Of a stretch of 22,425 nt of DNA, positions 1 to 22,425 are shown in pieces. The stretch spans positions 1 to 22,425 of the forward strand of contig NEEC01000183.1 of NCBI GenBank assembly GCA_002189035.1, written 5' to 3'. The notes beneath the pieces are model-generated. The model saw nothing but the letters and a program-made list of their open reading frames with translations, was not told where the DNA came from and made no database searches. The stretch's first letter is position 1, and every line of letters begins with the position of its first letter. A program made the position numbers and the translations under genes. Origin of the DNA: Utricularia gibba (lineage: Eukaryota; Plantae; Magnoliophyta).

Positions 1-232
1 TCAACAAAATGTGTCACGATTTTCGCCGAGTGGGACCAGAGTGGGCTCATCAGCCAGACCGAACCCGGGGCCCAAGCCAAGGGCCCCTCGAGAGCGCCCC
101 CCCACAAAACTAGATGGTGTTCCACGAAAAAAAATTAGGCGGCTCGTGATAACCCAACGCTAAGAAATGCATCCCTTTTTTCGCCGGGCTAAAACTGACT
201 TTGGGCTCATGCCCGGCGCGACCCCCAGCCCG
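1..232. repeat. Partial GC-rich ~150/300-bp subrepeat block (third dimer only; truncated by window start)
   Basis: Matches 2336-2565 apart from two homopolymer indels. Confidence 0.9.
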
Positions 233-377
233 TGTGCATACGCAGCAGCACCACGAGGCCACATGGGCTTGGTTAATGCCCGCGTGCTCGAGCAGCAGCC
301 ACAAGGCCATACGGCCGTGGAAAAAAAGAAAAACAACCATAAAATACAATAAGCCAAAAATAAAAAATAAAATTGAT

Positions 378-533
378 AAACCCTTGGTTCGGTTCGGGCC
401 CAATCAAAACCCGTAGGGTTTAACCCGTTCGGGTTGAACAGAAAGACAACCCCATGGGTCATGCAAACTGTAATACCCAGAATTTCATCGGTTGGGTCCG
501 AACCTGAATGGATCCAACCCAGGCCCATCTCTA
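378..533. mobile_element. Orphan hAT(Ac/Tam3)-like transposon terminus: TIR-like end plus subterminal AACCCG/CCGAAC motifs (copy 1)
   Basis: 523-533 reads TAGAGATGGGC on the minus strand, resembling Ac-type TIR starts (TAGGGATG). It is preceded by GGTTCGGTTCGGG, AACCCG (x2), CGGGTT, CCGAACC and CCAACCC. No partner TIR and no transposase were found in the monomer. Confidence 0.6.
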
Positions 534-536
534 ATC

Positions 537-1434
537 ATAATCATATGATATAGGTTTATTAAATTATAAATAATTGAAATACATTATTTATTAAACCGTA
601 GGATAACTGTGAAAGCTTCTTTGACTTAATTATTACCATTTGATCCTCAGTTGTACTTTGGATGGAGTGTGTATTTTTACTTTAGTCAATTTAATTAGCA
701 TTCGATCCTTGGTTATGATTCAGATCATATTTGCTATTTTTTTACTTTAAATATTTTTATTATCATTCGATCCTTAAGTATAATGCGGATCGAGCGCGTA
801 TTTTTTATTTTAATATTTTTATTAGCATTCGAACGTTAGGTATGCTGCGGATCGAGCGTATATTTTTCACTCTCATATTTTTATTAGCCTTAGATCCTTA
901 GGTATACTTTGGATCGAGTGCATATTCATTTATTTTAAATCTTAATTAGCGTTCCACCGTTAGGAGCAATTTAGAACGTGTATACATTACAATGCCATGC
1001 CACACGGGCGTGGTTTACGCACAACCCACGCCCGTGTGCCCTTGCAATGTAAACACGCTCCACATTGCTCCTAAGGATCGAGCGTTAACACAAGTTTCAA
1101 GTAAACCATCTCCACTCGATCCGAATCATGTCTAAAGACCGAAAGCCAATAAAAATATTAAAATAAAAAATATACGCTCGATCCGCATCATATCTTAGAA
1201 TCGAATGCAAATAGAATCGTTCAAATAAAAAATATACACTCGATTGGAATCTTAACCAAGGATCGAATGCTAATTAAAATGATTAAAATAAAAATGCACA
1301 CTCCATCCAAAGTATAACTAAGGGTCGAATGCTAATAAAATTAAAAACTAAGAAACTTTCACATGTAGTATATGCTTTAATAACTAACGTATTTACATTA
1401 TTTATATTTTAATAAACATATATCACATGATTAT
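537..1434. mobile_element. Foldback-type element / long inverted repeat with modular 62-bp arms (copy 1)
   Basis: Left end ATAATCATATGATATAGGTTTATTAAA vs reverse complement of right end ATAATCATGTGATATATGTTTATTAAA. Perfect inverted matches: 654-671/1297-1314 (18 bp), 690-715/1253-1278 (26 bp) and 1001-1013/1026-1038 (13 bp). The inverted repeat is certain; the transposon class is inferred, with no diagnostic TSD. Confidence 0.8.
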
Positions 1435-1714
1435 AAAAATATTTTTTTTGTCATTGTAGAAAGCTCATCACGCCACGCACACCACCCTGGAGAGGTTTCA
1501 ACAGCTGTTATGAACTCACAACCCCTTGCTCAGCAGATTCAGTAAAATTCTCTAACACTTGGGCTTCCAACGGATCATATCCCATATTCATTCATACGAA
1601 ATTGTGCAAGAATAATGTGACTTTGAGTTTGAACTAGATAGTAGGACGCTGATCGAAGAATGGCCCATCGAGTCTCTAAAATTGGCCGTCCTCGCTCAAC
1701 AAATGTGGGGTGCA
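1435..1714. other. Unique ~280-bp spacer between the foldback and the GC-rich block (present once in each monomer)
   Basis: No internal repetition and no recognisable RNA gene or coding homology. It starts with the 12-bp palindrome AAAAATATTTTT and a T8 run. Confidence 0.7.
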
Positions 1715-2565
1715 CGTGACATCCCAATTTCAACAAATGCATCATGATTTTCGTCGAGTGGGCCCATGAGCCCGTCCGAACCCGGGGCCCGGGCCAAGGG
1801 CCCCTCGAGAGCGCCCGCCTCAATACGAGGAGGTGTTCCTTCAAAAACCATATACGCGTCTCGTCACAACCCAACGTTAATAAATGCATCACTTTTTTTG
1901 GCGCGCTACTGCTGACTTTGGGCCTGAGTTCGGCACGACCTCCGGCTCGATCAGGGTGCCCCACCGAGAGCTCCTCCTTAAGTATAAAGTGTGTTGTTGA
2001 AAAAAACCGTGTGCGGTTCTCGTGACATCCTAACTTCAACAAATGCATCACGATTTTCGTCGAGTCGGACGGGACCGGGCTCCCGGGGCCCGGACGAGGC
2101 GCAGCGCCCGCTCCCCTCCCCCCCAAAACTAGAAGGTGTTCCATGGAAAACCATTTAGGCGGCTCGTGACAACCCAAAGTTAATAAATGCATCACTTTCT
2201 TTGCCGGGCTACAATGACTTTACGCTCGAGCCTGGTACGACGTATGGGAAGATTCGAGTGCCCCCCGAGAGCGTCTCCACAAGTATAAAGCGTGTTGTTG
2301 AAAAAACCGTGTTGGGTGCACGTGACATCCTAATTTCAACAAATGTGTCACGATTTTCGCCGAGTGGGACCAGAGTGGGCTCATCAGCCAGACCGAACCC
2401 GGGGCCCAAGCCAAGGGCCCCTCGAGAGCGCCCCCCACAAAACTAGATGGTGTTCCACGAAAAAAAATTAGGCGGCTCGTGATAACCCAACGCTAAGAAA
2501 TGCATCCCTTTTTTCGCCGGGCTAAAACTGACTTTGGGCTCATGCCCGGCGCGACCCCCAGCCCG
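1715..2565. repeat. GC-rich satellite-like block: ~150-bp subunits arranged as three ~300-bp dimers (last one truncated)
   Basis: Subunit heads CGT(G/C)A(C/T)A(T/A)CC..AAATG..TC lie at 1715, 1862, 2021, 2165, 2321 and 2478. Alternate subunits resemble each other most. Confidence 0.92.
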
Positions 2566-2710
2566 TGTGCATACGCAGCAGCACCACGAGGCCACATGGG
2601 CTTGGTTAATGCCCGCGTGCTCGAGCAGCAGCCACAAGGCCATACGGCCGTGGAAAAAAAGAAAAACAACCATAAAATACAATAAGCCAAAAATAAAAAA
2701 TAAAATTGAT

Positions 2711-2867
2711 AAACCCTTGGTTCGGTTCGGGCCCAATCAAAACCCGTAGGGTTTAACCCGTTCGGGTTGAACAGAAAGACAACCCCATGGGTCATGCAAA
2801 CTGTAATACCCAGAATTTCATCGGGTTGGGTCCGAACCTGAATGGATCCAACCCAGGCCCATCTCTA
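2711..2867. mobile_element. hAT-like terminus, copy 2
   Basis: Same as 378-533. Confidence 0.6.
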
Positions 2868-2870
2868 ATC

Positions 2871-3769
2871 ATAATCATATGATATAGGTTTATTAAATTA
2901 TAAATAATTGAAATACATTATTTATTAAACCGTAGGATAACTGTGAAAGCTTCTTTGACTTAATTATTACCATTTGATCCTCAGTTGTACTTTGGATGGA
3001 GTGTGTATTTTTACTTTAGTCAATTTAATTAGCATTCGATCCTTGGTTATGATTCAGATCATATTTGCTATTTTTTTACTTTAAATATTTTTATTATCAT
3101 TCGATCCTTAAGTATAATGCGGATCGAGCGCGTATTTTTTATTTTAATATTTTTTATTAGCATTCGAACGTTAGGTATGCTGCGGATCGAGCGTATATTT
3201 TTCACTCTCATATTTTTATTAGCCTTAGATCCTTAGGTATACTTTGGATCGAGTGCATATTCATTTATTTTAAATCTTAATTAGCGTTCCACCGTTAGGA
3301 GCAATTTAGAACGTGTATACATTACAATGCCATGCCACACGGGCGTGGTTTACGCACAACCCACGCCCGTGTGCCCTTGCAATGTAAACACGCTCCACAT
3401 TGCTCCTAAGGATCGAGCGTTAACACAAGTTTCAAGTAAACCATCTCCACTCGATCCGAATCATGTCTAAAGACCGAAAGCCAATAAAAATATTAAAATA
3501 AAAAATATACGCTCGATCCGCATCATATCTTAGAATCGAATGCAAATAGAATCGTTCAAATAAAAAATATACACTCGATTGGAATCTTAACCAAGGATCG
3601 AATGCTAATTAAAATGATTAAAATAAAAATGCACACTCCATCCAAAGTATAACTAAGGGTCGAATGCTAATAAAATTAAAAACTAAGAAACTTTCACATG
3701 TAGTATATGCTTTAATAACTAACGTATTTACATTATTTATATTTTAATAAACATATATCACATGATTAT
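2871..3769. mobile_element. Foldback inverted repeat, copy 2
   Basis: Same as 537-1434, with one extra T in a homopolymer. Confidence 0.8.
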
Positions 3770-4049
3770 AAAAATATTTTTTTTGTCATTGTAGAAAGCT
3801 CATCACGCCACGCACACCACCCTGGAGAGGTTTCAACAGCTGTTATGAACTCACAACCCCTTGCTCAGCAGATTCAGTAAAATTCTCTAACACTTGGGCT
3901 TCCAACGGATCATATCCCATATTCATTCATACGAAATTGTGCAAGAATAATGTGACTTTGAGTTTGAACTAGATAGTAGGACGCTGATCGAAGAATGGCC
4001 CATCGAGTCTCTAAAATTGGCCGTCCTCGCTCAACAAATGTGGGGTGCA

Positions 4050-4899
4050 CGTGACATCCCAATTTCAACAAATGCATCATGATTTTCGTCGAGTGGGCCC
4101 ATGAGCCCGTCCGAACCCGGGGCCCGGGCCAAGGGCCCCTCGAGAGCGCCCGCCTCAATACGAGGAGGTGTTCCTTCAAAAACCATATACGCGTCTCGTC
4201 ACAACCCAACGTTAATAAATGCATCACTTTTTTTGGCGCGCTACTGCTGACTTTGGGCCTGAGTTCGGCACGACCTCCGGCTCGATCAGGGTGCCCCCCG
4301 AGAGCTCCTCCTTAAGTATAAAGTGTGTTGTTGAAAAAAACCGTGTGCGGTTCTCGTGACATCCTAACTTCAACAAATGCATCACGATTTTCGTCGAGTC
4401 GGACGGGACCGGGCTCCCGGGGCCCGGACGAGGCGCAGCGCCCGCTCCCCTCCCCCCAAAACTAGAAGGTGTTCCATGGAAAACCATTTAGGCGGCTCGT
4501 GACAACCCAAAGTTAATAAATGCATCACTTTCTTTGCCGGGCTACAATGACTTTACGCTCGAGCCTGGTACGACGTATGGGAAGATTCGAGTGCCCCCCG
4601 AGAGCGTCTCCACAAGTATAAAGCGTGTTGTTGAAAAAACCGTGTTGGGTGCACGTGACATCCTAATTTCAACAAATGTGTCACGATTTTCGCCGAGTGG
4701 GACCAGAGTGGGCTCATCAGCCAGACCGAACCCGGGGCCCAAGCCAAGGGCCCCTCGAGAGCGCCCCCCCACAAAACTAGATGGTGTTCCACGAAAAAAA
4801 ATTAGGCGGCTCGTGATAACCCAACGCTAAGAAATGCATCCCTTTTTTCGCCGGGCTAAAACTGACTTTGGGCTCATGCCCGGCGCGACCCCCAGCCCG
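4050..4899. repeat. GC-rich 150/300-bp subrepeat block, copy 2
   Basis: Same as 1715-2565 apart from 1-nt indels. Confidence 0.92.
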
Positions 4900-5043
4900 T
4901 GTGCATACGCAGCAGCACCACGAGGCCACATGGGCTTGGTTAATGCCCGCGTGCTCGAGCAGCAGCCACAAGGCCATACGGCCGTGGAAAAAAAGAAAAC
5001 AACCATAAAATACAATAAGCCAAAAATAAAAAATAAAATTGAT

Positions 5044-5200
5044 AAACCCTTGGTTCGGTTCGGGCCCAATCAAAACCCGTAGGGTTTAACCCGTTCGGGT
5101 TGAACAGAAAGACAACCCCATGGGTCATGCAAACTGTAATACCCAGAATTTCATCGGGTTGGGTCCGAACCTGAATGGATCCAACCCAGGCCCATCTCTA
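5044..5200. mobile_element. hAT-like terminus, copy 3
   Basis: Same as 378-533. Confidence 0.6.
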
Positions 5201-5203
5201 ATC

Positions 5204-6102
5204 ATAATCATATGATATAGGTTTATTAAATTATAAATAATTGAAATACATTATTTATTAAACCGTAGGATAACTGTGAAAGCTTCTTTGACTTAATTAT
5301 TACCATTTGATCCTCAGTTGTACTTTGGATGGAGTGTGTATTTTTACTTTAGTCAATTTAATTAGCATTCGATCCTTGGTTATGATTCAGATCATATTTG
5401 CTATTTTTTTACTTTAAATATTTTTATTATCATTCGATCCTTAAGTATAATGCGGATCGAGCGCGTATTTTTTATTTTAATATTTTTTATTAGCATTCGA
5501 ACGTTAGGTATGCTGCGGATCGAGCGTATATTTTTCACTCTCATATTTTTATTAGCCTTAGATCCTTAGGTATACTTTGGATCGAGTGCATATTCATTTA
5601 TTTTAAATCTTAATTAGCGTTCCACCGTTAGGAGCAATTTAGAACGTGTATACATTACAATGCCATGCCACACGGGCGTGGTTTACGCACAACCCACGCC
5701 CGTGTGCCCTTGCAATGTAAACACGCTCCACATTGCTCCTAAGGATCGAGCGTTAACACAAGTTTCAAGTAAACCATCTCCACTCGATCCGAATCATGTC
5801 TAAAGACCGAAAGCCAATAAAAATATTAAAATAAAAAATATACGCTCGATCCGCATCATATCTTAGAATCGAATGCAAATAGAATCGTTCAAATAAAAAA
5901 TATACACTCGATTGGAATCTTAACCAAGGATCGAATGCTAATTAAAATGATTAAAATAAAAATGCACACTCCATCCAAAGTATAACTAAGGGTCGAATGC
6001 TAATAAAATTAAAAACTAAGAAACTTTCACATGTAGTATATGCTTTAATAACTAACGTATTTACATTATTTATATTTTAATAAACATATATCACATGATT
6101 AT
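5204..6102. mobile_element. Foldback inverted repeat, copy 3
   Basis: Same as 2871-3769. Confidence 0.8.
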
Positions 6103-6382
6103 AAAAATATTTTTTTTGTCATTGTAGAAAGCTCATCACGCCACGCACACCACCCTGGAGAGGTTTCAACAGCTGTTATGAACTCACAACCCCTTGCTCA
6201 GCAGATTCAGTAAAATTCTCTAACACTTGGGCTTCCAACGGATCATATCCCATATTCATTCATACGAAATTGTGCAAGAATAATGTGACTTTGAGTTTGA
6301 ACTAGATAGTAGGACGCTGATCGAAGAATGGCCCATCGAGTCTCTAAAATTGGCCGTCCTCGCTCAACAAATGTGGGGTGCA

Positions 6383-7232
6383 CGTGACATCCCAATTTCA
6401 ACAAATGCATCATGATTTTCGTCGAGTGGGCCCATGAGCCCGTCCGAACCCGGGGCCCGGGCCAAGGGCCCCTCGAGAGCGCCCGCCTCAATACGAGGAG
6501 GTGTTCCTTCAAAAACCATATACGCGTCTCGTCACAACCCAACGTTAATAAATGCATCACTTTTTTTGGCGCGCTACTGCTGACTTTGGGCCTGAGTTCG
6601 GCACGACCTCCGGCTCGATCAGGGTGCCCCCCGAGAGCTCCTCCTTAAGTATAAAGTGTGTTGTTGAAAAAAACCGTGTGCGGTTCTCGTGACATCCTAA
6701 CTTCAACAAATGCATCACGATTTTCGTCGAGTCGGACGGGACCGGGCTCCCGGGGCCCGGACGAGGCGCAGCGCCCGCTCCCCTCCCCCCAAAACTAGAA
6801 GGTGTTCCATGGAAAACCATTTAGGCGGCTCGTGACAACCCAAAGTTAATAAATGCATCACTTTCTTTGCCGGGCTACAATGACTTTACGCTCGAGCCTG
6901 GTACGACGTATGGGAAGATTCGAGTGCCCCCCGAGAGCGTCTCCACAAGTATAAAGCGTGTTGTTGAAAAAACCGTGTTGGGTGCACGTGACATCCTAAT
7001 TTCAACAAATGTGTCACGATTTTCGCCGAGTGGGACCAGAGTGGGCTCATCAGCCAGACCGAACCCGGGGCCCAAGCCAAGGGCCCCTCGAGAGCGCCCC
7101 CCCACAAAACTAGATGGTGTTCCACGAAAAAAAATTAGGCGGCTCGTGATAACCCAACGCTAAGAAATGCATCCCTTTTTTCGCCGGGCTAAAACTGACT
7201 TTGGGCTCATGCCCGGCGCGACCCCCAGCCCG
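6383..7232. repeat. GC-rich 150/300-bp subrepeat block, copy 3
   Basis: Same as 1715-2565 apart from 1-nt indels. Confidence 0.92.
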
Positions 7233-7377
7233 TGTGCATACGCAGCAGCACCACGAGGCCACATGGGCTTGGTTAATGCCCGCGTGCTCGAGCAGCAGCC
7301 ACAAGGCCATACGGCCGTGGAAAAAAAGAAAAACAACCATAAAATACAATAAGCCAAAAATAAAAAATAAAATTGAT

Positions 7378-7534
7378 AAACCCTTGGTTCGGTTCGGGCC
7401 CAATCAAAACCCGTAGGGTTTAACCCGTTCGGGTTGAACAGAAAGACAACCCCATGGGTCATGCAAACTGTAATACCCAGAATTTCATCGGGTTGGGTCC
7501 GAACCTGAATGGATCCAACCCAGGCCCATCTCTA
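7378..7534. mobile_element. hAT-like terminus, copy 4
   Basis: Same as 378-533. Confidence 0.6.
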
Positions 7535-7537
7535 ATC

Positions 7538-8436
7538 ATAATCATATGATATAGGTTTATTAAATTATAAATAATTGAAATACATTATTTATTAAACCGT
7601 AGGATAACTGTGAAAGCTTCTTTGACTTAATTATTACCATTTGATCCTCAGTTGTACTTTGGATGGAGTGTGTATTTTTACTTTAGTCAATTTAATTAGC
7701 ATTCGATCCTTGGTTATGATTCAGATCATATTTGCTATTTTTTTACTTTAAATATTTTTATTATCATTCGATCCTTAAGTATAATGCGGATCGAGCGCGT
7801 ATTTTTTATTTTAATATTTTTTATTAGCATTCGAACGTTAGGTATGCTGCGGATCGAGCGTATATTTTTCACTCTCATATTTTTATTAGCCTTAGATCCT
7901 TAGGTATACTTTGGATCGAGTGCATATTCATTTATTTTAAATCTTAATTAGCGTTCCACCGTTAGGAGCAATTTAGAACGTGTATACATTACAATGCCAT
8001 GCCACACGGGCGTGGTTTACGCACAACCCACGCCCGTGTGCCCTTGCAATGTAAACACGCTCCACATTGCTCCTAAGGATCGAGCGTTAACACAAGTTTC
8101 AAGTAAACCATCTCCACTCGATCCGAATCATGTCTAAAGACCGAAAGCCAATAAAAATATTAAAATAAAAAATATACGCTCGATCCGCATCATATCTTAG
8201 AATCGAATGCAAATAGAATCGTTCAAATAAAAAATATACACTCGATTGGAATCTTAACCAAGGATCGAATGCTAATTAAAATGATTAAAATAAAAATGCA
8301 CACTCCATCCAAAGTATAACTAAGGGTCGAATGCTAATAAAATTAAAAACTAAGAAACTTTCACATGTAGTATATGCTTTAATAACTAACGTATTTACAT
8401 TATTTATATTTTAATAAACATATATCACATGATTAT
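7538..8436. mobile_element. Foldback inverted repeat, copy 4
   Basis: Same as 2871-3769. Confidence 0.8.
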
Positions 8437-8716
8437 AAAAATATTTTTTTTGTCATTGTAGAAAGCTCATCACGCCACGCACACCACCCTGGAGAGGTTT
8501 CAACAGCTGTTATGAACTCACAACCCCTTGCTCAGCAGATTCAGTAAAATTCTCTAACACTTGGGCTTCCAACGGATCATATCCCATATTCATTCATACG
8601 AAATTGTGCAAGAATAATGTGACTTTGAGTTTGAACTAGATAGTAGGACGCTGATCGAAGAATGGCCCATCGAGTCTCTAAAATTGGCCGTCCTCGCTCA
8701 ACAAATGTGGGGTGCA

Positions 8717-9567
8717 CGTGACATCCCAATTTCAACAAATGCATCATGATTTTCGTCGAGTGGGCCCATGAGCCCGTCCGAACCCGGGGCCCGGGCCAAG
8801 GGCCCCTCGAGAGCGCCCGCCTCAATACGAGGAGGTGTTCCTTCAAAAACCATATACGCGTCTCGTCACAACCCAACGTTAATAAATGCATCACTTTTTT
8901 TGGCGCGCTACTGCTGACTTTGGGCCTGAGTTCGGCACGACCTCCGGCTCGATCAGGGTGCCCCCCGAGAGCTCCTCCTTAAGTATAAAGTGTGTTGTTG
9001 AAAAAAACCGTGTGCGGTTCTCGTGACATCCTAACTTCAACAAATGCATCACGATTTTCGTCGAGTCGGACGGGACCGGGCTCCCGGGGCCCGGACGAGG
9101 CGCAGCGCCCGCTCCCCTCCCCCCCAAAACTAGAAGGTGTTCCATGGAAAACCATTTAGGCGGCTCGTGACAACCCAAAGTTAATAAATGCATCACTTTC
9201 TTTGCCGGGCTACAATGACTTTACGCTCGAGCCTGGTACGACGTATGGGAAGATTCGAGTGCCCCCCGAGAGCGTCTCCACAAGTATAAAGCGTGTTGTT
9301 GAAAAAACCGTGTTGGGTGCACGTGACATCCTAATTTCAACAAATGTGTCACGATTTTCGCCGAGTGGGACCAGAGTGGGCTCATCAGCCAGACCGAACC
9401 CGGGGCCCAAGCCAAGGGCCCCTCGAGAGCGCCCCCCCACAAAACTAGATGGTGTTCCACGAAAAAAAATTAGGCGGCTCGTGATAACCCAACGCTAAGA
9501 AATGCATCCCTTTTTTCGCCGGGCTAAAACTGACTTTGGGCTCATGCCCGGCGCGACCCCCAGCCCG
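8717..9567. repeat. GC-rich 150/300-bp subrepeat block, copy 4 (consensus form)
   Basis: Subunit heads at 8717, 8864, 9022, 9166, 9322 and 9480 (spacings 147, 158, 144, 156, 158). Confidence 0.92.
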
Positions 9568-9712
9568 TGTGCATACGCAGCAGCACCACGAGGCCACATG
9601 GGCTTGGTTAATGCCCGCGTGCTCGAGCAGCAGCCACAAGGCCATACGGCCGTGGAAAAAAAGAAAAACAACCATAAAATACAATAAGCCAAAAATAAAA
9701 AATAAAATTGAT

Positions 9713-9869
9713 AAACCCTTGGTTCGGTTCGGGCCCAATCAAAACCCGTAGGGTTTAACCCGTTCGGGTTGAACAGAAAGACAACCCCATGGGTCATGCA
9801 AACTGTAATACCCAGAATTTCATCGGGTTGGGTCCGAACCTGAATGGATCCAACCCAGGCCCATCTCTA
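9713..9869. mobile_element. hAT-like terminus, copy 5
   Basis: Same as 378-533. Confidence 0.6.
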
Positions 9870-9872
9870 ATC

Positions 9873-10771: not shown

Positions 10772-11051
10772 AAAAATATTTTTTTTGTCATTGTAGAAAG
10801 CTCATCACGCCACGCACACCACCCTGGAGAGGTTTCAACAGCTGTTATGAACTCACAACCCCTTGCTCAGCAGATTCAGTAAAATTCTCTAACACTTGGG
10901 CTTCCAACGGATCATATCCCATATTCATTCATACGAAATTGTGCAAGAATAATGTGACTTTGAGTTTGAACTAGATAGTAGGACGCTGATCGAAGAATGG
11001 CCCATCGAGTCTCTAAAATTGGCCGTCCTCGCTCAACAAATGTGGGGTGCA

Positions 11052-11902: not shown

Positions 11903-12047
11903 TGTGCATACGCAGCAGCACCACGAGGCCACATGGGCTTGGTTAATGCCCGCGTGCTCGAGCAGCAGCCACAAGGCCATACGGCCGTGGAAAAAAAGAA
12001 AAACAACCATAAAATACAATAAGCCAAAAATAAAAAATAAAATTGAT

Positions 12048-12204
12048 AAACCCTTGGTTCGGTTCGGGCCCAATCAAAACCCGTAGGGTTTAACCCGTTC
12101 GGGTTGAACAGAAAGACAACCCCATGGGTCATGCAAACTGTAATACCCAGAATTTCATCGGGTTGGGTCCGAACCTGAATGGATCCAACCCAGGCCCATC
12201 TCTA
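12048..12204. mobile_element. hAT-like terminus, copy 6
   Basis: Same as 378-533. Confidence 0.6.
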
Positions 12205-12207
12205 ATC

Positions 12208-13106
12208 ATAATCATATGATATAGGTTTATTAAATTATAAATAATTGAAATACATTATTTATTAAACCGTAGGATAACTGTGAAAGCTTCTTTGACTTAA
12301 TTATTACCATTTGATCCTCAGTTGTACTTTGGATGGAGTGTGTATTTTTACTTTAGTCAATTTAATTAGCATTCGATCCTTGGTTATGATTCAGATCATA
12401 TTTGCTATTTTTTTACTTTAAATATTTTTATTATCATTCGATCCTTAAGTATAATGCGGATCGAGCGCGTATTTTTTATTTTAATATTTTTTATTAGCAT
12501 TCGAACGTTAGGTATGCTGCGGATCGAGCGTATATTTTTCACTCTCATATTTTTATTAGCCTTAGATCCTTAGGTATACTTTGGATCGAGTGCATATTCA
12601 TTTATTTTAAATCTTAATTAGCGTTCCACCGTTAGGAGCAATTTAGAACGTGTATACATTACAATGCCATGCCACACGGGCGTGGTTTACGCACAACCCA
12701 CGCCCGTGTGCCCTTGCAATGTAAACACGCTCCACATTGCTCCTAAGGATCGAGCGTTAACACAAGTTTCAAGTAAACCATCTCCACTCGATCCGAATCA
12801 TGTCTAAAGACCGAAAGCCAATAAAAATATTAAAATAAAAAATATACGCTCGATCCGCATCATATCTTAGAATCGAATGCAAATAGAATCGTTCAAATAA
12901 AAAATATACACTCGATTGGAATCTTAACCAAGGATCGAATGCTAATTAAAATGATTAAAATAAAAATGCACACTCCATCCAAAGTATAACTAAGGGTCGA
13001 ATGCTAATAAAATTAAAAACTAAGAAACTTTCACATGTAGTATATGCTTTAATAACTAACGTATTTACATTATTTATATTTTAATAAACATATATCACAT
13101 GATTAT
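12208..13106. mobile_element. Foldback inverted repeat, copy 6
   Basis: Same as 2871-3769. Confidence 0.8.
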
Positions 13107-13386
13107 AAAAATATTTTTTTTGTCATTGTAGAAAGCTCATCACGCCACGCACACCACCCTGGAGAGGTTTCAACAGCTGTTATGAACTCACAACCCCTTG
13201 CTCAGCAGATTCAGTAAAATTCTCTAACACTTGGGCTTCCAACGGATCATATCCCATATTCATTCATACGAAATTGTGCAAGAATAATGTGACTTTGAGT
13301 TTGAACTAGATAGTAGGACGCTGATCGAAGAATGGCCCATCGAGTCTCTAAAATTGGCCGTCCTCGCTCAACAAATGTGGGGTGCA

Positions 13387-14236
13387 CGTGACATCCCAAT
13401 TTCAACAAATGCATCATGATTTTCGTCGAGTGGGCCCATGAGCCCGTCCGAACCCGGGGCCCGGGCCAAGGGCCCCTCGAGAGCGCCCGCCTCAATACGA
13501 GGAGGTGTTCCTTCAAAAACCATATACGCGTCTCGTCACAACCCAACGTTAATAAATGCATCACTTTTTTTGGCGCGCTACTGCTGACTTTGGGCCTGAG
13601 TTCGGCACGACCTCCGGCTCGATCAGGGTGCCCCCCGAGAGCTCCTCCTTAAGTATAAAGTGTGTTGTTGAAAAAAACCGTGTGCGGTTCTCGTGACATC
13701 CTAACTTCAACAAATGCATCACGATTTTCGTCGAGTCGGACGGGACCGGGCTCCCGGGGCCCGGACGAGGCGCAGCGCCCGCTCCCCTCCCCCCCAAAAC
13801 TAGAAGGTGTTCCATGGAAAACCATTTAGGCGGCTCGTGACAACCCAAAGTTAATAAATGCATCACTTTCTTTGCCGGGCTACAATGACTTTACGCTCGA
13901 GCCTGGTACGACGTATGGGAAGATTCGAGTGCCCCCCGAGAGCGTCTCCACAAGTATAAAGCGTGTTGTTGAAAAAACCGTGTTGGGTGCACGTGACATC
14001 CTAATTTCAACAAATGTGTCACGATTTTCGCCGAGTGGGACCAGAGTGGGCTCATCAGCCAGACCGAACCCGGGGCCCAAGCCAAGGGCCCCTCGAGAGC
14101 GCCCCCCACAAAACTAGATGGTGTTCCACGAAAAAAAATTAGGCGGCTCGTGATAACCCAACGCTAAGAAATGCATCCCTTTTTTCGCCGGGCTAAAACT
14201 GACTTTGGGCTCATGCCCGGCGCGACCCCCAGCCCG
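13387..14236. repeat. GC-rich 150/300-bp subrepeat block, copy 6
   Basis: Same as 8717-9567, with one C fewer at ~14102. Confidence 0.92.
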
Positions 14237-14381
14237 TGTGCATACGCAGCAGCACCACGAGGCCACATGGGCTTGGTTAATGCCCGCGTGCTCGAGCAGC
14301 AGCCACAAGGCCATACGGCCGTGGAAAAAAAGAAAAACAACCATAAAATACAATAAGCCAAAAATAAAAAATAAAATTGAT

Positions 14382-14538
14382 AAACCCTTGGTTCGGTTCG
14401 GGCCCAATCAAAACCCGTAGGGTTTAACCCGTTCGGGTTGAACAGAAAGACAACCCCATGGGTCATGCAAACTGTAATACCCAGAATTTCATCGGGTTGG
14501 GTCCGAACCTGAATGGATCCAACCCAGGCCCATCTCTA
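14382..14538. mobile_element. hAT-like terminus, copy 7
   Basis: Same as 378-533. Confidence 0.6.
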
Positions 14539-14541
14539 ATC

Positions 14542-15440
14542 ATAATCATATGATATAGGTTTATTAAATTATAAATAATTGAAATACATTATTTATTAAA
14601 CCGTAGGATAACTGTGAAAGCTTCTTTGACTTAATTATTACCATTTGATCCTCAGTTGTACTTTGGATGGAGTGTGTATTTTTACTTTAGTCAATTTAAT
14701 TAGCATTCGATCCTTGGTTATGATTCAGATCATATTTGCTATTTTTTTACTTTAAATATTTTTATTATCATTCGATCCTTAAGTATAATGCGGATCGAGC
14801 GCGTATTTTTTATTTTAATATTTTTTATTAGCATTCGAACGTTAGGTATGCTGCGGATCGAGCGTATATTTTTCACTCTCATATTTTTATTAGCCTTAGA
14901 TCCTTAGGTATACTTTGGATCGAGTGCATATTCATTTATTTTAAATCTTAATTAGCGTTCCACCGTTAGGAGCAATTTAGAACGTGTATACATTACAATG
15001 CCATGCCACACGGGCGTGGTTTACGCACAACCCACGCCCGTGTGCCCTTGCAATGTAAACACGCTCCACATTGCTCCTAAGGATCGAGCGTTAACACAAG
15101 TTTCAAGTAAACCATCTCCACTCGATCCGAATCATGTCTAAAGACCGAAAGCCAATAAAAATATTAAAATAAAAAATATACGCTCGATCCGCATCATATC
15201 TTAGAATCGAATGCAAATAGAATCGTTCAAATAAAAAATATACACTCGATTGGAATCTTAACCAAGGATCGAATGCTAATTAAAATGATTAAAATAAAAA
15301 TGCACACTCCATCCAAAGTATAACTAAGGGTCGAATGCTAATAAAATTAAAAACTAAGAAACTTTCACATGTAGTATATGCTTTAATAACTAACGTATTT
15401 ACATTATTTATATTTTAATAAACATATATCACATGATTAT
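14542..15440. mobile_element. Foldback inverted repeat, copy 7
   Basis: Same as 2871-3769. Confidence 0.8.
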
Positions 15441-15720
15441 AAAAATATTTTTTTTGTCATTGTAGAAAGCTCATCACGCCACGCACACCACCCTGGAGAG
15501 GTTTCAACAGCTGTTATGAACTCACAACCCCTTGCTCAGCAGATTCAGTAAAATTCTCTAACACTTGGGCTTCCAACGGATCATATCCCATATTCATTCA
15601 TACGAAATTGTGCAAGAATAATGTGACTTTGAGTTTGAACTAGATAGTAGGACGCTGATCGAAGAATGGCCCATCGAGTCTCTAAAATTGGCCGTCCTCG
15701 CTCAACAAATGTGGGGTGCA

Positions 15721-16572
15721 CGTGACATCCCAATTTCAACAAATGCATCATGATTTTCGTCGAGTGGGCCCATGAGCCCGTCCGAACCCGGGGCCCGGGC
15801 CAAGGGCCCCTCGAGAGCGCCCGCCTCAATACGAGGAGGTGTTCCTTCAAAAACCATATACGCGTCTCGTCACAACCCAACGTTAATAAATGCATCACTT
15901 TTTTTGGCGCGCTACTGCTGACTTTGGGCCTGAGTTCGGCACGACCTCCGGCTCGATCAGGGTGCCCCACCGAGAGCTCCTCCTTAAGTATAAAGTGTGT
16001 TGTTGAAAAAAACCGTGTGCGGTTCTCGTGACATCCTAACTTCAACAAATGCATCACGATTTTCGTCGAGTCGGACGGGACCGGGCTCCCGGGGCCCGGA
16101 CGAGGCGCAGCGCCCGCTCCCCTCCCCCCCAAAACTAGAAGGTGTTCCATGGAAAACCATTTAGGCGGCTCGTGACAACCCAAAGTTAATAAATGCATCA
16201 CTTTCTTTGCCGGGCTACAATGACTTTACGCTCGAGCCTGGTACGACGTATGGGAAGATTCGAGTGCCCCCCGAGAGCGTCTCCACAAGTATAAAGCGTG
16301 TTGTTGAAAAAACCGTGTTGGGTGCACGTGACATCCTAATTTCAACAAATGTGTCACGATTTTCGCCGAGTGGGACCAGAGTGGGCTCATCAGCCAGACC
16401 GAACCCGGGGCCCAAGCCAAGGGCCCCTCGAGAGCGCCCCCCCACAAAACTAGATGGTGTTCCACGAAAAAAAATTAGGCGGCTCGTGATAACCCAACGC
16501 TAAGAAATGCATCCCTTTTTTCGCCGGGCTAAAACTGACTTTGGGCTCATGCCCGGCGCGACCCCCAGCCCG
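15721..16572. repeat. GC-rich 150/300-bp subrepeat block, copy 7
   Basis: Same as 8717-9567, plus an A insertion at 15969. Confidence 0.92.
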
Positions 16573-16717
16573 TGTGCATACGCAGCAGCACCACGAGGCC
16601 ACATGGGCTTGGTTAATGCCCGCGTGCTCGAGCAGCAGCCACAAGGCCATACGGCCGTGGAAAAAAAGAAAAACAACCATAAAATACAATAAGCCAAAAA
16701 TAAAAAATAAAATTGAT

Positions 16718-16874
16718 AAACCCTTGGTTCGGTTCGGGCCCAATCAAAACCCGTAGGGTTTAACCCGTTCGGGTTGAACAGAAAGACAACCCCATGGGTC
16801 ATGCAAACTGTAATACCCAGAATTTCATCGGGTTGGGTCCGAACCTGAATGGATCCAACCCAGGCCCATCTCTA
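16718..16874. mobile_element. hAT-like terminus, copy 8
   Basis: Same as 378-533. Confidence 0.6.
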
Positions 16875-16877
16875 ATC

Positions 16878-17776
16878 ATAATCATATGATATAGGTTTAT
16901 TAAATTATAAATAATTGAAATACATTATTTATTAAACCGTAGGATAACTGTGAAAGCTTCTTTGACTTAATTATTACCATTTGATCCTCAGTTGTACTTT
17001 GGATGGAGTGTGTATTTTTACTTTAGTCAATTTAATTAGCATTCGATCCTTGGTTATGATTCAGATCATATTTGCTATTTTTTTACTTTAAATATTTTTA
17101 TTATCATTCGATCCTTAAGTATAATGCGGATCGAGCGCGTATTTTTTATTTTAATATTTTTTATTAGCATTCGAACGTTAGGTATGCTGCGGATCGAGCG
17201 TATATTTTTCACTCTCATATTTTTATTAGCCTTAGATCCTTAGGTATACTTTGGATCGAGTGCATATTCATTTATTTTAAATCTTAATTAGCGTTCCACC
17301 GTTAGGAGCAATTTAGAACGTGTATACATTACAATGCCATGCCACACGGGCGTGGTTTACGCACAACCCACGCCCGTGTGCCCTTGCAATGTAAACACGC
17401 TCCACATTGCTCCTAAGGATCGAGCGTTAACACAAGTTTCAAGTAAACCATCTCCACTCGATCCGAATCATGTCTAAAGACCGAAAGCCAATAAAAATAT
17501 TAAAATAAAAAATATACGCTCGATCCGCATCATATCTTAGAATCGAATGCAAATAGAATCGTTCAAATAAAAAATATACACTCGATTGGAATCTTAACCA
17601 AGGATCGAATGCTAATTAAAATGATTAAAATAAAAATGCACACTCCATCCAAAGTATAACTAAGGGTCGAATGCTAATAAAATTAAAAACTAAGAAACTT
17701 TCACATGTAGTATATGCTTTAATAACTAACGTATTTACATTATTTATATTTTAATAAACATATATCACATGATTAT
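16878..17776. mobile_element. Foldback inverted repeat, copy 8
   Basis: Same as 2871-3769. Confidence 0.8.
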
Positions 17777-18056
17777 AAAAATATTTTTTTTGTCATTGTA
17801 GAAAGCTCATCACGCCACGCACACCACCCTGGAGAGGTTTCAACAGCTGTTATGAACTCACAACCCCTTGCTCAGCAGATTCAGTAAAATTCTCTAACAC
17901 TTGGGCTTCCAACGGATCATATCCCATATTCATTCATACGAAATTGTGCAAGAATAATGTGACTTTGAGTTTGAACTAGATAGTAGGACGCTGATCGAAG
18001 AATGGCCCATCGAGTCTCTAAAATTGGCCGTCCTCGCTCAACAAATGTGGGGTGCA

Positions 18057-18906
18057 CGTGACATCCCAATTTCAACAAATGCATCATGATTTTCGTCGAG
18101 TGGGCCCATGAGCCCGTCCGAACCCGGGGCCCGGGCCAAGGGCCCCTCGAGAGCGCCCGCCTCAATACGAGGAGGTGTTCCTTCAAAAACCATATACGCG
18201 TCTCGTCACAACCCAACGTTAATAAATGCATCACTTTTTTTGGCGCGCTACTGCTGACTTTGGGCCTGAGTTCGGCACGACCTCCGGCTCGATCAGGGTG
18301 CCCCCCGAGAGCTCCTCCTTAAGTATAAAGTGTGTTGTTGAAAAAAACGTGTGCGGTTCTCGTGACATCCTAACTTCAACAAATGCATCACGATTTTCGT
18401 CGAGTCGGACGGGACCGGGCTCCCGGGGCCCGGACGAGGCGCAGCGCCCGCTCCCCTCCCCCCCAAAACTAGAAGGTGTTCCATGGAAAACCATTTAGGC
18501 GGCTCGTGACAACCCAAAGTTAATAAATGCATCACTTTCTTTGCCGGGCTACAATGACTTTACGCTCGAGCCTGGTACGACGTATGGGAAGATTCGAGTG
18601 CCCCCCGAGAGCGTCTCCACAAGTATAAAGCGTGTTGTTGAAAAAACCGTGTTGGGTGCACGTGACATCCTAATTTCAACAAATGTGTCACGATTTTCGC
18701 CGAGTGGGACCAGAGTGGGCTCATCAGCCAGACCGAACCCGGGGCCCAAGCCAAGGGCCCCTCGAGAGCGCCCCCCCACAAAACTAGATGGTGTTCCACG
18801 AAAAAAAATTAGGCGGCTCGTGATAACCCAACGCTAAGAAATGCATCCCTTTTTTCGCCGGGCTAAAACTGACTTTGGGCTCATGCCCGGCGCGACCCCC
18901 AGCCCG
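18057..18906. repeat. GC-rich 150/300-bp subrepeat block, copy 8
   Basis: Same as 8717-9567, with one C fewer at ~18348. Confidence 0.92.
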
Positions 18907-19050
18907 TGTGCATACGCAGCAGCACCACGAGGCCACATGGGCTTGGTTAATGCCCGCGTGCTCGAGCAGCAGCCACAAGGCCATACGGCCGTGGAAAAAA
19001 AGAAAAACAACCATAAAATACAATAAGCCAAAAATAAAAATAAAATTGAT

Positions 19051-19207
19051 AAACCCTTGGTTCGGTTCGGGCCCAATCAAAACCCGTAGGGTTTAACCCG
19101 TTCGGGTTGAACAGAAAGACAACCCCATGGGTCATGCAAACTGTAATACCCAGAATTTCATCGGGTTGGGTCCGAACCTGAATGGATCCAACCCAGGCCC
19201 ATCTCTA
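19051..19207. mobile_element. hAT-like terminus, copy 9
   Basis: Same as 378-533. Confidence 0.6.
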
Positions 19208-19210
19208 ATC

Positions 19211-20109
19211 ATAATCATATGATATAGGTTTATTAAATTATAAATAATTGAAATACATTATTTATTAAACCGTAGGATAACTGTGAAAGCTTCTTTGACT
19301 TAATTATTACCATTTGATCCTCAGTTGTACTTTGGATGGAGTGTGTATTTTTACTTTAGTCAATTTAATTAGCATTCGATCCTTGGTTATGATTCAGATC
19401 ATATTTGCTATTTTTTTACTTTAAATATTTTTATTATCATTCGATCCTTAAGTATAATGCGGATCGAGCGCGTATTTTTTATTTTAATATTTTTTATTAG
19501 CATTCGAACGTTAGGTATGCTGCGGATCGAGCGTATATTTTTCACTCTCATATTTTTATTAGCCTTAGATCCTTAGGTATACTTTGGATCGAGTGCATAT
19601 TCATTTATTTTAAATCTTAATTAGCGTTCCACCGTTAGGAGCAATTTAGAACGTGTATACATTACAATGCCATGCCACACGGGCGTGGTTTACGCACAAC
19701 CCACGCCCGTGTGCCCTTGCAATGTAAACACGCTCCACATTGCTCCTAAGGATCGAGCGTTAACACAAGTTTCAAGTAAACCATCTCCACTCGATCCGAA
19801 TCATGTCTAAAGACCGAAAGCCAATAAAAATATTAAAATAAAAAATATACGCTCGATCCGCATCATATCTTAGAATCGAATGCAAATAGAATCGTTCAAA
19901 TAAAAAATATACACTCGATTGGAATCTTAACCAAGGATCGAATGCTAATTAAAATGATTAAAATAAAAATGCACACTCCATCCAAAGTATAACTAAGGGT
20001 CGAATGCTAATAAAATTAAAAACTAAGAAACTTTCACATGTAGTATATGCTTTAATAACTAACGTATTTACATTATTTATATTTTAATAAACATATATCA
20101 CATGATTAT
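19211..20109. mobile_element. Foldback inverted repeat, copy 9
   Basis: Same as 2871-3769. Confidence 0.8.
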
Positions 20110-20389
20110 AAAAATATTTTTTTTGTCATTGTAGAAAGCTCATCACGCCACGCACACCACCCTGGAGAGGTTTCAACAGCTGTTATGAACTCACAACCCC
20201 TTGCTCAGCAGATTCAGTAAAATTCTCTAACACTTGGGCTTCCAACGGATCATATCCCATATTCATTCATACGAAATTGTGCAAGAATAATGTGACTTTG
20301 AGTTTGAACTAGATAGTAGGACGCTGATCGAAGAATGGCCCATCGAGTCTCTAAAATTGGCCGTCCTCGCTCAACAAATGTGGGGTGCA

Positions 20390-21236
20390 CGTGACATCCC
20401 AATTTCAACAAATGCATCATGATTTTCGTCGAGTGGGCCCATGAGCCCGTCCGAACCCGGGGCCCGGGCCAAGGGCCCCTCGAGAGCGCCCGCCTCAATA
20501 CGAGGAGGTGTTCCTTCAAAAACCATATACGCGTCTCGTCACAACCCAACGTTAATAAATGCATCACTTTTTTTGGCGCGCTACTGCTGACTTTGGGCCT
20601 GAGTTCGGCACGACCTCCGGCTCGATCAGGGTGCCCCCCGAGAGCTCCTCCTTAAGTATAAAGTGTGTTGTTGAAAAAAACCGTGTGCGGTTCTCGTGAC
20701 ATCCTAACTTCAACAAATGCATCACGATTTTCGTCGAGTCGGACGGGACCGGGCTCCCGGGGCCCGGACGAGGCGCAGCGCCCGCTCCCCTCCCCCCCAA
20801 AACTAGAAGGTGTTCCATGGAAAACCATTTAGGCGGCTCGTGACAACCCAAAGTTAATAAATGCATCACTTTCTTTGCCGGGCTACAATGACTTTACGCT
20901 CGAGCCTGGTACGACGTATGGGAAGATTCGAGTGCCCCCGAGAGCGTCTCCACAAGTATAAAGCGTGTTGTTGAAAAAACCGTGTTGGGTGCACGTGACA
21001 TCCTAATTTCAACAAATGTGTCACGATTTTCGCCGAGTGGGACCAGAGTGGGCTCATCAGCCAGACCGAACCCGGGCCCAAGCCAAGGGCCCTCGAGAGC
21101 GCCCCCCCACAAAACTAGATGGTGTTCCACGAAAAAAAATTAGGCGGCTCGTGATAACCCAACGCTAAGAAATGCATCCCTTTTTTCGCCGGCTAAAACT
21201 GACTTTGGGCTCATGCCCGGCGCGACCCCCAGCCCG
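20390..21236. repeat. GC-rich 150/300-bp subrepeat block, copy 9
   Basis: Same as 8717-9567, with four 1-nt homopolymer deletions. Confidence 0.9.
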
Positions 21237-21380
21237 TGTGCATACGCAGCAGCACCACGAGGCCACATGGGCTTGGTTAATGCCCGCGTGCTCGAGCAGC
21301 AGCCACAAGGCCATACGGCCGTGGAAAAAAAGAAAAACAACCATAAAATACAATAAGCCAAAAAAAAAAATAAAATTGAT

Positions 21381-21535
21381 AAACCCTTGGTTCGGTTCGG
21401 GCCCAATCAAACCCGTAGGGTTTAACCCGTTCGGGTTGAACAGAAAGACAACCCATGGGTCATGCAAACTGTAATACCCAGAATTTCATCGGGTTGGGTC
21501 CGAACCTGAATGGATCCAACCCAGGCCCATCTCTA
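21381..21535. mobile_element. hAT-like terminus, copy 10
   Basis: Same as 378-533, with two homopolymer deletions. Confidence 0.6.
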
Positions 21536-21538
21536 ATC

Positions 21539-22425
21539 ATAATCATATGATATAGGTTTATTAAATTATAAATAATTGAAATACATTATTTATTAAACCG
21601 TAGGATAACTGTGAAAGCTTCTTTGACTTAATTATTACCATTTGATCCTCAGTTGTACTTTGGATGGAGTGTGTATTTTTACTTTAGTCAATTTAATTAG
21701 CATTCGATCCTTGGTTATGATTCAGATCATATTTGCTATTTTTTTACTTTAAATATTTTTATTATCATTCGATCCTTAAGTATAATGCGGATCGAGCGCG
21801 TATTTTTTATTTTAATATTTTTTATTAGCATTCGAACGTTAGGTATGCTGCGGATCGAGCGTATATTTTTCACACTCTCATATTTTTATTAGCCTTAGAT
21901 CCTTAGGTATACTTTGGATCGAGTGCATATTCATTTATTTTAAATCTTAATTAGCGTTCCACCGTTAGGAGCAATTTAGAACGTGTATACATTACAATGC
22001 CATGCCACACACGGGCGTGGTTTACGCACAACCCACGCCCGTGTGCCCTTGCAATGTAAACACGCTCCACATTGCTCCTAAGGATCGAGCGTTAACACAA
22101 GTTTCAAGTAAACCATCTCCACTCGATCCGAATCATGTCTAAAGACCGAAAGCCAATAAAATATTAAAATAAAAAATATATACGCTCGATCCGCATCATA
22201 TCTTAGAATCGAATGCAAATAGAATCGTTCAAATAAAAAATATACACTCGATTGGAATCTTAACCAAGGATCGAATGCTAATTAAAATGATTAAAATAAA
22301 AATGCACACTCCATCCAAAGTATAACTAAGGGTCGAATGCTAATAAAATTAAAAACTAAGAAACTTTCACATGTAGTATATGCTTTAATAACTAACGTAT
22401 TTACATTATTTATATTTTAATAAAC
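21539..22425. mobile_element. Foldback inverted repeat, copy 10 (last ~17 bp cut off by the window end)
   Basis: Same as 2871-3769, with three dinucleotide insertions and one deletion. Confidence 0.78.

What the first reader, a model, noticed from the sequence alone, without database searches (positions are those of the whole stretch)
1..22425. Composite 2,335-bp macrosatellite: old ~150/300-bp satellite + orphan hAT end + modular foldback, amplified as one unit
Seen: every monomer joins four unlike parts in fixed order, with repeats nested at 62, ~150, ~300 and 2,335 bp plus an ~899-bp inverted repeat. Established: some plant satellites have kilobase monomers derived from transposable elements (e.g. 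certain potato centromeric satellites, Ogre-derived satellites in Fabeae). Inference: DNA-transposon pieces landed in or beside a ~150/300-bp satellite, and the chimera was re-amplified as a new monomer. This would be a satellite caught at birth with its parts still legible. I do not recognise it as a described family.
Basis: partly seen in the sequence, partly recalled or inferred. Interest (0 to 1): 0.75.

Follow-up and report, generated by a model that had tools for sequence, protein, structure and literature searches.

The report
Compound 2.3-kb plant satellite repeat
The whole window is a real, very uniform tandem repeat of a 2,335-base unit made of an older 300-base repeat plus dead jumping-gene pieces; it is a clear example of a kind of plant satellite DNA that is already known.

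Summary
The window holds 9.6 head-to-tail copies of a 2,335-bp unit. The nine full copies show no substitution. They differ only by 14 one-base indels at homopolymer runs, which cluster at the contig ends, so they are long-read noise.

Each unit has these parts:
- About 2.85 copies of an older ~300-bp A+B dimer repeat (73-83% alike).
- A short GC-rich piece and an A-rich linker.
- One transposon end that looks like hAT but has no partner.
- An 898-bp foldback whose arms are built of 62-bp modules (arms 79% alike).

New here: the last "unique" 270 bp is the dead 3' end of a PIF/Harbinger transposase gene, on the minus strand. Its closest relatives are from Lamiales.

The hAT label is unproven, and the "caught at birth" claim may be inflated by consensus polishing.

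Compound long-monomer satellites are already described: Sobo, potato centromeric repeats and rye B repeats. This is therefore a new member of a known kind.

The scan has noted the same 2.33-kb unit on at least four other pieces of this genome, which its notes call Utricularia gibba.

The parts
1..22425 (+). Tandem array: 9.6 head-to-tail copies of a 2,335-bp unit, all in one orientation. It runs off both ends of the window.
   Evidence: All parts below are given for the first unit and recur every ~2,335 bp.
1705..2566 (+). Older satellite-like GC-rich module (54-58% GC): dimer U1 1705-2009, dimer U2 2010-2309, and a truncated third dimer 2310-2566 (the same sequence as 1-231). Six ~150-bp subunits alternate A,B,A,B,A,B.
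   Evidence: TRF period 302. Self-BLAST 73-76% identity. Subunit identities: A-A 75-83%, B-B 66-78%, A-B 50-59%. About 58 bp of repeat phase is missing where the non-satellite block sits.
232..305 (+). Short GC-rich piece (62% GC) with an internal ~45-bp direct duplication; origin unknown.
   Evidence: Homology to the B subunit ends near 231; sequence read.
306..369 (+). A-rich linker (28% GC).
370..533 (-). Transposon terminus that looks like hAT. The outer end is TAGAGATGGGCC at 533->522 on the minus strand, with the element interior pointing toward 370. The subterminal region is rich in GGGTT/AACCC (8 copies) and CCGAAC (4 copies) in both orientations. There is no second end in the unit.
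   Evidence: The first five bases fit the hAT terminal consensus YARNG (recalled from memory, not tested against a library).
537..1434 (.). 898-bp foldback (31% GC). Outer AT-rich segments lie at 537-629 and 1344-1434. The left arm has ~5.4 modules of 62 bp (630-965) and the right arm ~4 (1097-1343). The central GC-rich palindrome is at 987-1052.
   Evidence: Arms are 79% identical over 397 aligned positions, with one module-sized gap. DNA fold -213 kcal/mol, z = -25. Centre alone: z = -5.6.
1431..1704 (-). Dead 3' end (last ~88 codons) of a PIF/Harbinger (DDE_Tnp_4) transposase gene. It reads in three frame pieces, 1701->1606, 1610->1530 and ~1527->1435, so it has two frameshifts and at least one in-frame stop. 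The terminal stop at 1433->1431 lies just inside the right foldback arm. The 5' side is cut at ~1701-1704, exactly at the satellite junction.
   Evidence: HMMER search of 1.84 billion proteins returned P0002 (E = 4.4e-4, 70% identity). P0002 matches Pfam DDE_Tnp_4 at 2.5e-13 and Plant_tran at 1.6e-8. BLASTP of the pieces against P0002: 72% identity, E = 5e-13, and 81% identity, E = 2e-11. tblastn of 120 relatives hits only here. There is no credible homology upstream.

Best explanation
This is a genuine nuclear tandem array of a compound-monomer satellite (a macrosatellite, in effect a higher-order repeat) in a Lamiales plant, which the scan's notes call Utricularia gibba.

History, inferred: an old tandem repeat of ~300-bp A+B dimers collected DNA-transposon insertions. 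These were a PIF/Harbinger copy, an element with a hAT-like end, and a foldback, which may be an element of its own or an inverted duplication of transposon sequence. Deletions then trimmed these to a 1.47-kb block of debris that replaced ~58 bp of the repeat.

A segment holding this block plus ~2.85 flanking dimers was then duplicated. Unequal crossing-over or gene conversion between the now long, identical units expanded and homogenised it.

Shown: the array, its uniformity, the nested repeats, the foldback, the dead transposase tail, and the non-terminal (deletion-type) junctions.

Inferred: the order of events, the recombination mechanism and the chromosomal location.

The DNA has no detectable coding or structured-RNA function. 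Any effect would come from its bulk and from a strong hairpin-prone palindrome every 2.3 kb.
For: Ten anchors occur in one orientation at 2,328-2,336-bp spacing. The copies have 0 substitutions across ~21 kb. The internal parts are far more diverged than the units: arms 79%, dimers 73-76%, subunits 50-83%. This is the pattern of a higher-order repeat.

The Harbinger transposase tail has frameshifts and stops, and its relatives are from Lamiales. It is cut at the satellite junction with nothing credible upstream, so that junction is a deletion or rearrangement and not an element end.

Only one hAT-like terminus is present per unit. Rfam finds nothing at the gathering threshold and only two weak chance-level hits at E<=1. 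There are no tRNAs, no Pfam domain in the recurrent ORFs, and no plasmid or phage match.

Scan notes report the same 2.33-kb unit on at least four other read-length pieces, and a copia stump co-amplified inside a 313-bp satellite in the same genome (leads only, not checked). Compound long monomers with up to 99% identity between copies are documented (PMC8091179; PMC5895790).
Against: No array edge lies in the window, so chromosomal embedding is not shown here. The zero-substitution figure comes from a polished long-read consensus, which can hide real variants. Unequal crossing-over cannot be told apart from rolling-circle amplification on this evidence.
Confidence: 0.75

Rival explanations
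1. The array is older and more varied than it looks. Reads from a long, slightly heterogeneous array were piled onto a short collapsed contig, and consensus polishing made every copy identical. It is still a compound satellite, but not one 'caught at birth'.
For: The only differences are homopolymer indels, which rise toward the contig ends where coverage falls. That shows the sequence is a consensus product. Scan notes list several pieces of similar, read-length size made only of this unit, which is typical of unresolved arrays.
Against: Real compound satellites reach ~99% identity between copies (PMC8091179). Position-specific variants usually survive polishing when reads span several units. 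Not one substitution is seen in 21 kb.
Confidence: 0.15
2. The contig is the linear image of an extrachromosomal multimer. A 2,335-bp circle (eccDNA or a plasmid-like element) would be copied by rolling-circle replication and would not be a chromosomal array.
For: The array is pure, with no edge and perfectly identical units. Scan notes raise the same idea for other kilobase-unit arrays in this genome.
Against: There is no Rep or any other gene and no match to plasmids or phages. The content is nuclear junk: a dead Harbinger tail, a transposon end and an old tandem repeat. Direct repeats of 22 kb need reads that themselves carry many tandem copies. A scan note (unchecked, and possibly about a different repeat) reports LTR insertions inside a large tandem repeat of this genome.
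Confidence: 0.07
3. The unit is one mobile composite element, for example a non-autonomous transposon carrying internal repeats, that inserted head to tail many times. The array would then not have grown by recombination.
For: It contains a transposon terminus and a foldback. A scan note proposes this for another satellite in this genome.
Against: Only one terminus is present per unit and no inverted partner is found within 3 mismatches. The Harbinger piece is cut inside its coding sequence at the satellite junction. No target-site duplication or spacer separates the units, and the satellite phase runs on across them.
Confidence: 0.03

Closest known systems
Sobo satellite of Solanum bulbocastanum (4.7-kb monomer; Tek et al. 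2005, as described in PMC8091179 and PMC5895790)
   Same: A kilobase compound monomer made from part of a transposable element plus a genomic tandem repeat. The copies are highly homogenised (up to 99%), which is read as recent amplification.
   Different: Sobo's transposon part is an LTR-retrotransposon LTR. Here the recognisable pieces are DNA-transposon debris: a Harbinger transposase tail, a hAT-like end and a foldback. This unit is half the size. Sobo was mapped by FISH to one locus, and nothing is mapped here.
Rye B-chromosome long-monomer repeats (E3900, D1100; Langdon et al. 2000, cited in PMC5895790 and PMC9659126) and potato centromeric long-monomer satellites (St3-58 and others)
   Same: Long monomers (0.9-5.4 kb) assembled from unrelated repeated or low-copy pieces, including transposon fragments (D1100 includes a MITE). 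They are thought to be evolutionarily young.
   Different: Those lie on B chromosomes or in centromeres of large genomes. This one is in a very small genome whose putative centromeres are reported to lack satellite repeats (PMC8333044). Its location is unknown.
Tetris foldback transposon and its TIR-220 satellite in Drosophila virilis (Dias et al. 2014, listed in PMC9659126)
   Same: A foldback whose long inverted arms are built of short tandem modules, linked to satellite formation.
   Different: In Tetris the arm modules themselves expand into the satellite. Here the whole foldback is a passenger inside a larger unit, and its 62-bp modules have not expanded beyond 4-5 copies per arm.
Higher-order repeats with a co-amplified transposon fragment (for example the copia stump in this genome's 313-bp satellite; scan notes s1-233701 and s1-249045)
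   Same: A transposon fragment stuck in a short-unit satellite is copied along with a fixed number of neighbouring monomers.
   Different: Here the neighbouring monomers are old and diverged (73-83%). No live array of the ~300-bp repeat is seen in the window. I could not test whether it is the same family as the 313-bp satellite.

Membership tests
Satellite DNA with compound long monomer (macrosatellite) | Head-to-tail tandem copies in one orientation over tens of kb | tested here: met
   9.6 copies fill 22.4 kb and all anchors are on the + strand.
Satellite DNA with compound long monomer (macrosatellite) | Monomer made of unrelated sequence parts, at least one derived from a transposon or another repeat | tested here: met
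   A/B dimer repeat, foldback, Harbinger transposase tail.
Satellite DNA with compound long monomer (macrosatellite) | High identity between monomers relative to the internal parts | tested here: met
   0 substitutions between units, against 50-83% identity between internal repeats. Caveat: the sequence is a polished consensus.
Satellite DNA with compound long monomer (macrosatellite) | Chromosomal locus (FISH, or a junction to unique DNA) | not testable with these tools
   No array edge lies in the window and the rest of the genome could not be read.
PIF/Harbinger transposon | DDE_Tnp_4 / Plant_tran transposase homology | tested here: met
   Met through a bridge protein. Window pieces match P0002 at 72% and 81% identity (E = 5e-13 and 2e-11), and P0002 matches PF13359 and PF04827. 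The window pieces alone are too short for Pfam. Only the last ~88 codons are present, and they are broken.
PIF/Harbinger transposon | Terminal inverted repeats flanked by a 3-bp TWA duplication | tested here: inconclusive
   No element end adjoins the tail. The 5' side is cut at the satellite junction and the 3' side runs straight into the foldback. The TAA/TTA next to the foldback ends is explained by the palindrome itself (sequence).
hAT transposon (non-autonomous end) | Terminal inverted repeats on both ends, beginning YARNG | tested here: not met
   One end begins TAGAG. No inverted partner is found in the unit within 3 of 12 mismatches. At best it is an orphan end.
hAT transposon (non-autonomous end) | 8-bp target-site duplication; homology to a known hAT family | not testable with these tools
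   One end gives no duplication to compare, and no Repbase or Dfam library was on hand.
Foldback (FB-like) transposon | Long inverted arms made of short tandem modules | tested here: met
   Arms of ~400-480 bp hold 4-5 modules of 62 bp each.
Foldback (FB-like) transposon | Target-site duplication and dispersed copies elsewhere | tested here: inconclusive
   No direct repeat flanks 537-1434 (ATC on the left, AAA on the right). Dispersed copies could not be searched for.
rDNA intergenic spacer or 5S-derived satellite | Adjoining or embedded rRNA gene sequence | tested here: not met
   No Rfam family at the gathering threshold over the window and no rRNA-like hit at E<=1 in one unit. The species' own spacer was not available for comparison.

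The most novel reading that the evidence does not exclude
These pure kilobase-unit arrays sit on unplaced read-length contigs. They could be the missing satellite DNA of Utricularia gibba centromeres or pericentromeres, which the published assembly-based view reports as lacking satellite repeats (PMC8333044). The hairpin-prone foldback every 2.3 kb could also help the array expand through stalled replication and template switching.
Probability: 0.1. Interest if true: 0.6.

Novelty: new member of a known kind. Interest (0 to 1): 0.3.

Why it matters
This is an unusually clear worked example of how a satellite unit can be put together. Every part can still be told apart: an older 300-bp repeat, a dead Harbinger transposase tail, one transposon end and a modular foldback. 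The junctions are deletion-type, and the units have not diverged at all.

Most documented compound monomers come from LTR retrotransposons in large genomes. This one is built from DNA-transposon debris, in a genome known for its small size and for reportedly lacking satellites at its centromeres. It is useful as a teaching case and as a marker (one BamHI and one HindIII site per unit). It does not change what is known about satellite origins.

Tried and rejected
- Rfam over the whole window at the gathering threshold found nothing. In one unit at E<=1 it gave only a 28-bit miRNA-family hit on the central hairpin and a 14-bit bacterial sRNA hit, both chance-level. No tRNA was found.
- Pfam on nine recurrent ORFs and six pieces of the unique module found nothing real. 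The PDB sequence search was blank.
- A word-based protein search with a 133-aa ORF was blank.
- Two metagenome scans, one with a degenerate satellite core and one with the transposon end, were both blank. This says little, because plant DNA is scarce in that collection.
- Plasmid and phage collections gave no match.
- I tested whether the transposase homology runs upstream into the satellite (HSPs reaching 1800, and a weak recurrent match at 80-124). It does not. The best score is 22.7 bits against 18 bits on a reversed control, at non-equivalent repeat phases.
- I tested whether each 62-bp module forms its own small hairpin. It does not (z = 0.0, -2.1 and +1.4).
- The other hit of the large HMMER search, P0001, is a bacterial repeat protein and a chance match.
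- Lan et al. 2017 and Tek et al. 2005 are not held in the paper library.
Full report

Yes. Base-by-base self-comparison peaks at a lag of 2,335 and its multiples. A 20-mer anchor around the BamHI site recurs ten times, always on the + strand, at spacings of 2,328-2,336 bp.

The nine complete units align over 2,336 columns with no substitution at all. The 14 variable columns are all single-base indels inside or next to homopolymer runs. These indels are absent from the two central copies. They pile up in the last full copy (7) and in the right-hand partial copy (7 in 914 bp). That is the signature of long-read consensus error where coverage falls off at contig ends, not of biological variation.

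The window has no edge of the array. It starts inside the GC-rich module and ends inside the foldback.

**2. Anatomy of one unit (coordinates of the first copy)**

*(a) 1705-2335, continuing into 1-231: the satellite-like module.* This GC-rich module has two ~300-bp dimers and a truncated third, 73-76% alike. Cut at a conserved core, it resolves into six ~150-bp subunits that alternate between two types. A-A identity is 75-83%, B-B is 66-78% and A-B is only 50-59%. The third dimer loses homology near 231 and the first regains it near 1705. About 58 bp of repeat phase is thus missing where the non-satellite block sits.

*(b) 232-305:* a short GC-rich piece with an internal duplication, of unknown origin.

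*(c) 306-369:* an A-rich linker.

*(d) 370-533: a transposon terminus read on the minus strand.*
- It begins TAGAGATGGGCC at 533 and runs inward through a region dense in GGGTT/AACCC and CCGAAC motifs in both orientations.
- The first five bases fit the hAT terminal consensus YARNG, and the motif pattern looks like hAT subterminal repeats. Both points rest on my memory of the family, not on a library search.
- No inverted partner exists in the unit, even allowing 3 of 12 mismatches.

*(e) 537-1434: an AT-rich foldback.*
- The arms align at 79% identity over 397 positions, with one module-sized gap.
- The left arm carries ~5.4 modules of 62 bp and the right arm ~4.
- A GC-rich palindrome lies at the centre, 987-1052.
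- As single-stranded DNA the foldback folds at -213 kcal/mol against -77 for shuffles, z = -25.
- The single 62-bp modules do not fold on their own.
- No target-site duplication flanks the foldback.

*(f) 1435-1704:* the stretch that looked unique; see section 3.

**3. The 'unique' module is a dead PIF/Harbinger transposase tail**

A scan note on another piece mentioned a Harbinger tail in a macrosatellite, so I translated this stretch. Pfam and the PDB search saw nothing in the short pieces.

I therefore spent the one full HMMER search on the 43-residue piece at 1578-1706 on the minus strand. It returned P0002, a 146-aa fragment from a Logan contig, at E = 4.4e-4 and 70% identity. It also returned a bacterial repeat protein that is a chance hit. 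P0002 matches Pfam DDE_Tnp_4 (2.5e-13) and Plant_tran (1.6e-8).

Pairwise BLASTP gives two matches:
- The first window piece matches P0002 at 23/32 residues (E = 5e-13).
- A second piece in another frame (1511-1591, minus) matches the adjoining part of P0002 at 17/21 residues (E = 2e-11).

P0002's own relatives are DDE_Tnp_4, HARBI1-like and ALP1-like proteins, mainly from Lamiales (Buddleja, Salvia, Striga, Sesamum, Primulina). That fits a Lentibulariaceae host.

tblastn of 120 of these proteins onto the unit hits only 1435-1701 on the minus strand. It shows a third piece matching the C-terminal W..WRD motif region. Two relatives align to within 0-4 residues of their own ends at 1435.

The gene remnant has two frameshifts and at least one in-frame stop. 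Its final stop, at 1433->1431, lies just inside the right foldback arm. Its upstream side is cut at 1701-1704, exactly where the satellite homology begins. Nothing credible lies beyond that point: 22.7 bits at best, against 18 bits on a reversed control. That junction is therefore a deletion or rearrangement scar, not an element terminus.

**4. What it is not**

- No rRNA, 5S or other Rfam family reaches threshold. The only weak hit is a 28-bit miRNA-family match on the central hairpin.
- There are no tRNAs.
- There is no protein domain in any recurrent ORF.
- There is no similarity to bacterial plasmids or phages.

On this evidence an rDNA-spacer origin, a 5S origin (as the scan notes report for other satellites of this genome) and a bacterial replicon are all unsupported. 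The species' own 45S spacer could not be compared.

**5. Most likely history and mechanism**

The internal repeats differ by 17-50%, while the 2,335-bp units do not differ at all. That is the pattern of a higher-order repeat: old, diverged parts inside young or continuously homogenised large units.

I infer the following history. A ~300-bp dimer satellite collected DNA-transposon insertions. Deletions reduced them to a 1.47-kb block bounded by non-terminal junctions. A segment holding this block and ~2.85 dimers was duplicated. Unequal crossing-over or gene conversion between the long identical units then expanded it.

Rolling-circle copying of an excised circle followed by reintegration would give the same picture, and I cannot tell the two apart here. 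The scan's notes report a copia stump co-amplified with neighbouring monomers of a 313-bp satellite in the same genome. This suggests the process recurs there, but I did not check those windows.

**6. Caveats**

- The zero-substitution result comes from a polished long-read contig. If reads from a longer, slightly varied array were stacked on a collapsed contig, polishing would erase minority variants. 'Caught at birth' is plausible, not shown.
- Chromosomal embedding is not shown in this window.
- The scan's notes list the same 2.33-kb composite unit on at least four other pieces of 23-27 kb, and its 0.9-kb foldback on two pieces. This points to well over 100 kb of the repeat, but those notes are unchecked leads.
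- The host name Utricularia gibba also comes from the notes. My only independent support is the Lamiales affinity of the transposase tail.
I could not fetch the DNA around P0002 or its relatives to test whether the foldback arm is the 3' end of the Harbinger element.

**7. Comparison with what is known**

Compound monomers are an established class. [quoted passage not shown] It adds that similar long monomers made of unrelated sequences exist in potato and rye, with up to 99% identity between copies. PMC5895790 reviews long-monomer satellites (0.7-5.4 kb) and reads the rye and Solanum cases as young. PMC9659126 tabulates satellites derived from transposons, including MITEs, a CACTA element and the Tetris foldback.

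This repeat works like those and meets the class definition, except for chromosomal mapping, which was untestable.

It differs in three ways: its parts are DNA-transposon debris, it contains a complete modular foldback, and its host is a tiny genome. For that host, PMC8333044 states that the putative centromeric regions lack satellite repeats. I found no paper in the held library describing this or any U. gibba satellite. Repbase, Dfam and PlantSat could not be searched.

**8. Verdict**

The feature is real and the anatomy is confirmed and extended with the Harbinger tail. It is a new member of a known kind, and interest is moderate to low.

Noticed in passing
window 1431-1436 and 537-540: The stop codon of the dead Harbinger transposase lies within 1-4 nt of the outer end of the right foldback arm, and two relatives end their proteins at this same point. 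The foldback arm could therefore be the 3' non-coding end of that Harbinger element, duplicated in inverted orientation, instead of a separate foldback transposon.
   Followed up: partly
window 987-1052 (and every ~2,335 bp): GC-rich palindrome at the centre of the foldback (13-bp perfect inner stem, z = -5.6). It gives a weak sub-threshold Rfam hit to a plant miRNA precursor family (28 bits against a gathering score of 75). A scan note reports an LTR family inserting repeatedly at one base of 'a conserved GC-rich palindrome inside a large tandem repeat' of this genome. I could not check whether that is the same site.
   Followed up: partly
window 537-1434: CpG is over-represented in the AT-rich foldback (observed/expected 1.67) because each 62-bp module keeps CG-containing cores such as CGATCC and GGATCGAGCG. 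The GC-rich modules lie at 0.7-1.1. There is no sign of methylation-driven CpG decay.
   Followed up: no
window 378-384 and 414-421: Two isolated telomere-like heptamers (AAACCCT, and AGGGTTTA on the other strand) lie inside the subterminal region of the hAT-like end.
   Followed up: no
whole genome (scan notes): The notes list other pure arrays of kilobase units in this genome (2.09 kb over at least 60 kb; 1.37 kb over 33-60 kb). Several macrosatellites seem to lie on unplaced contigs of a genome that is reported to lack satellite repeats at its putative centromeres.
   Followed up: no
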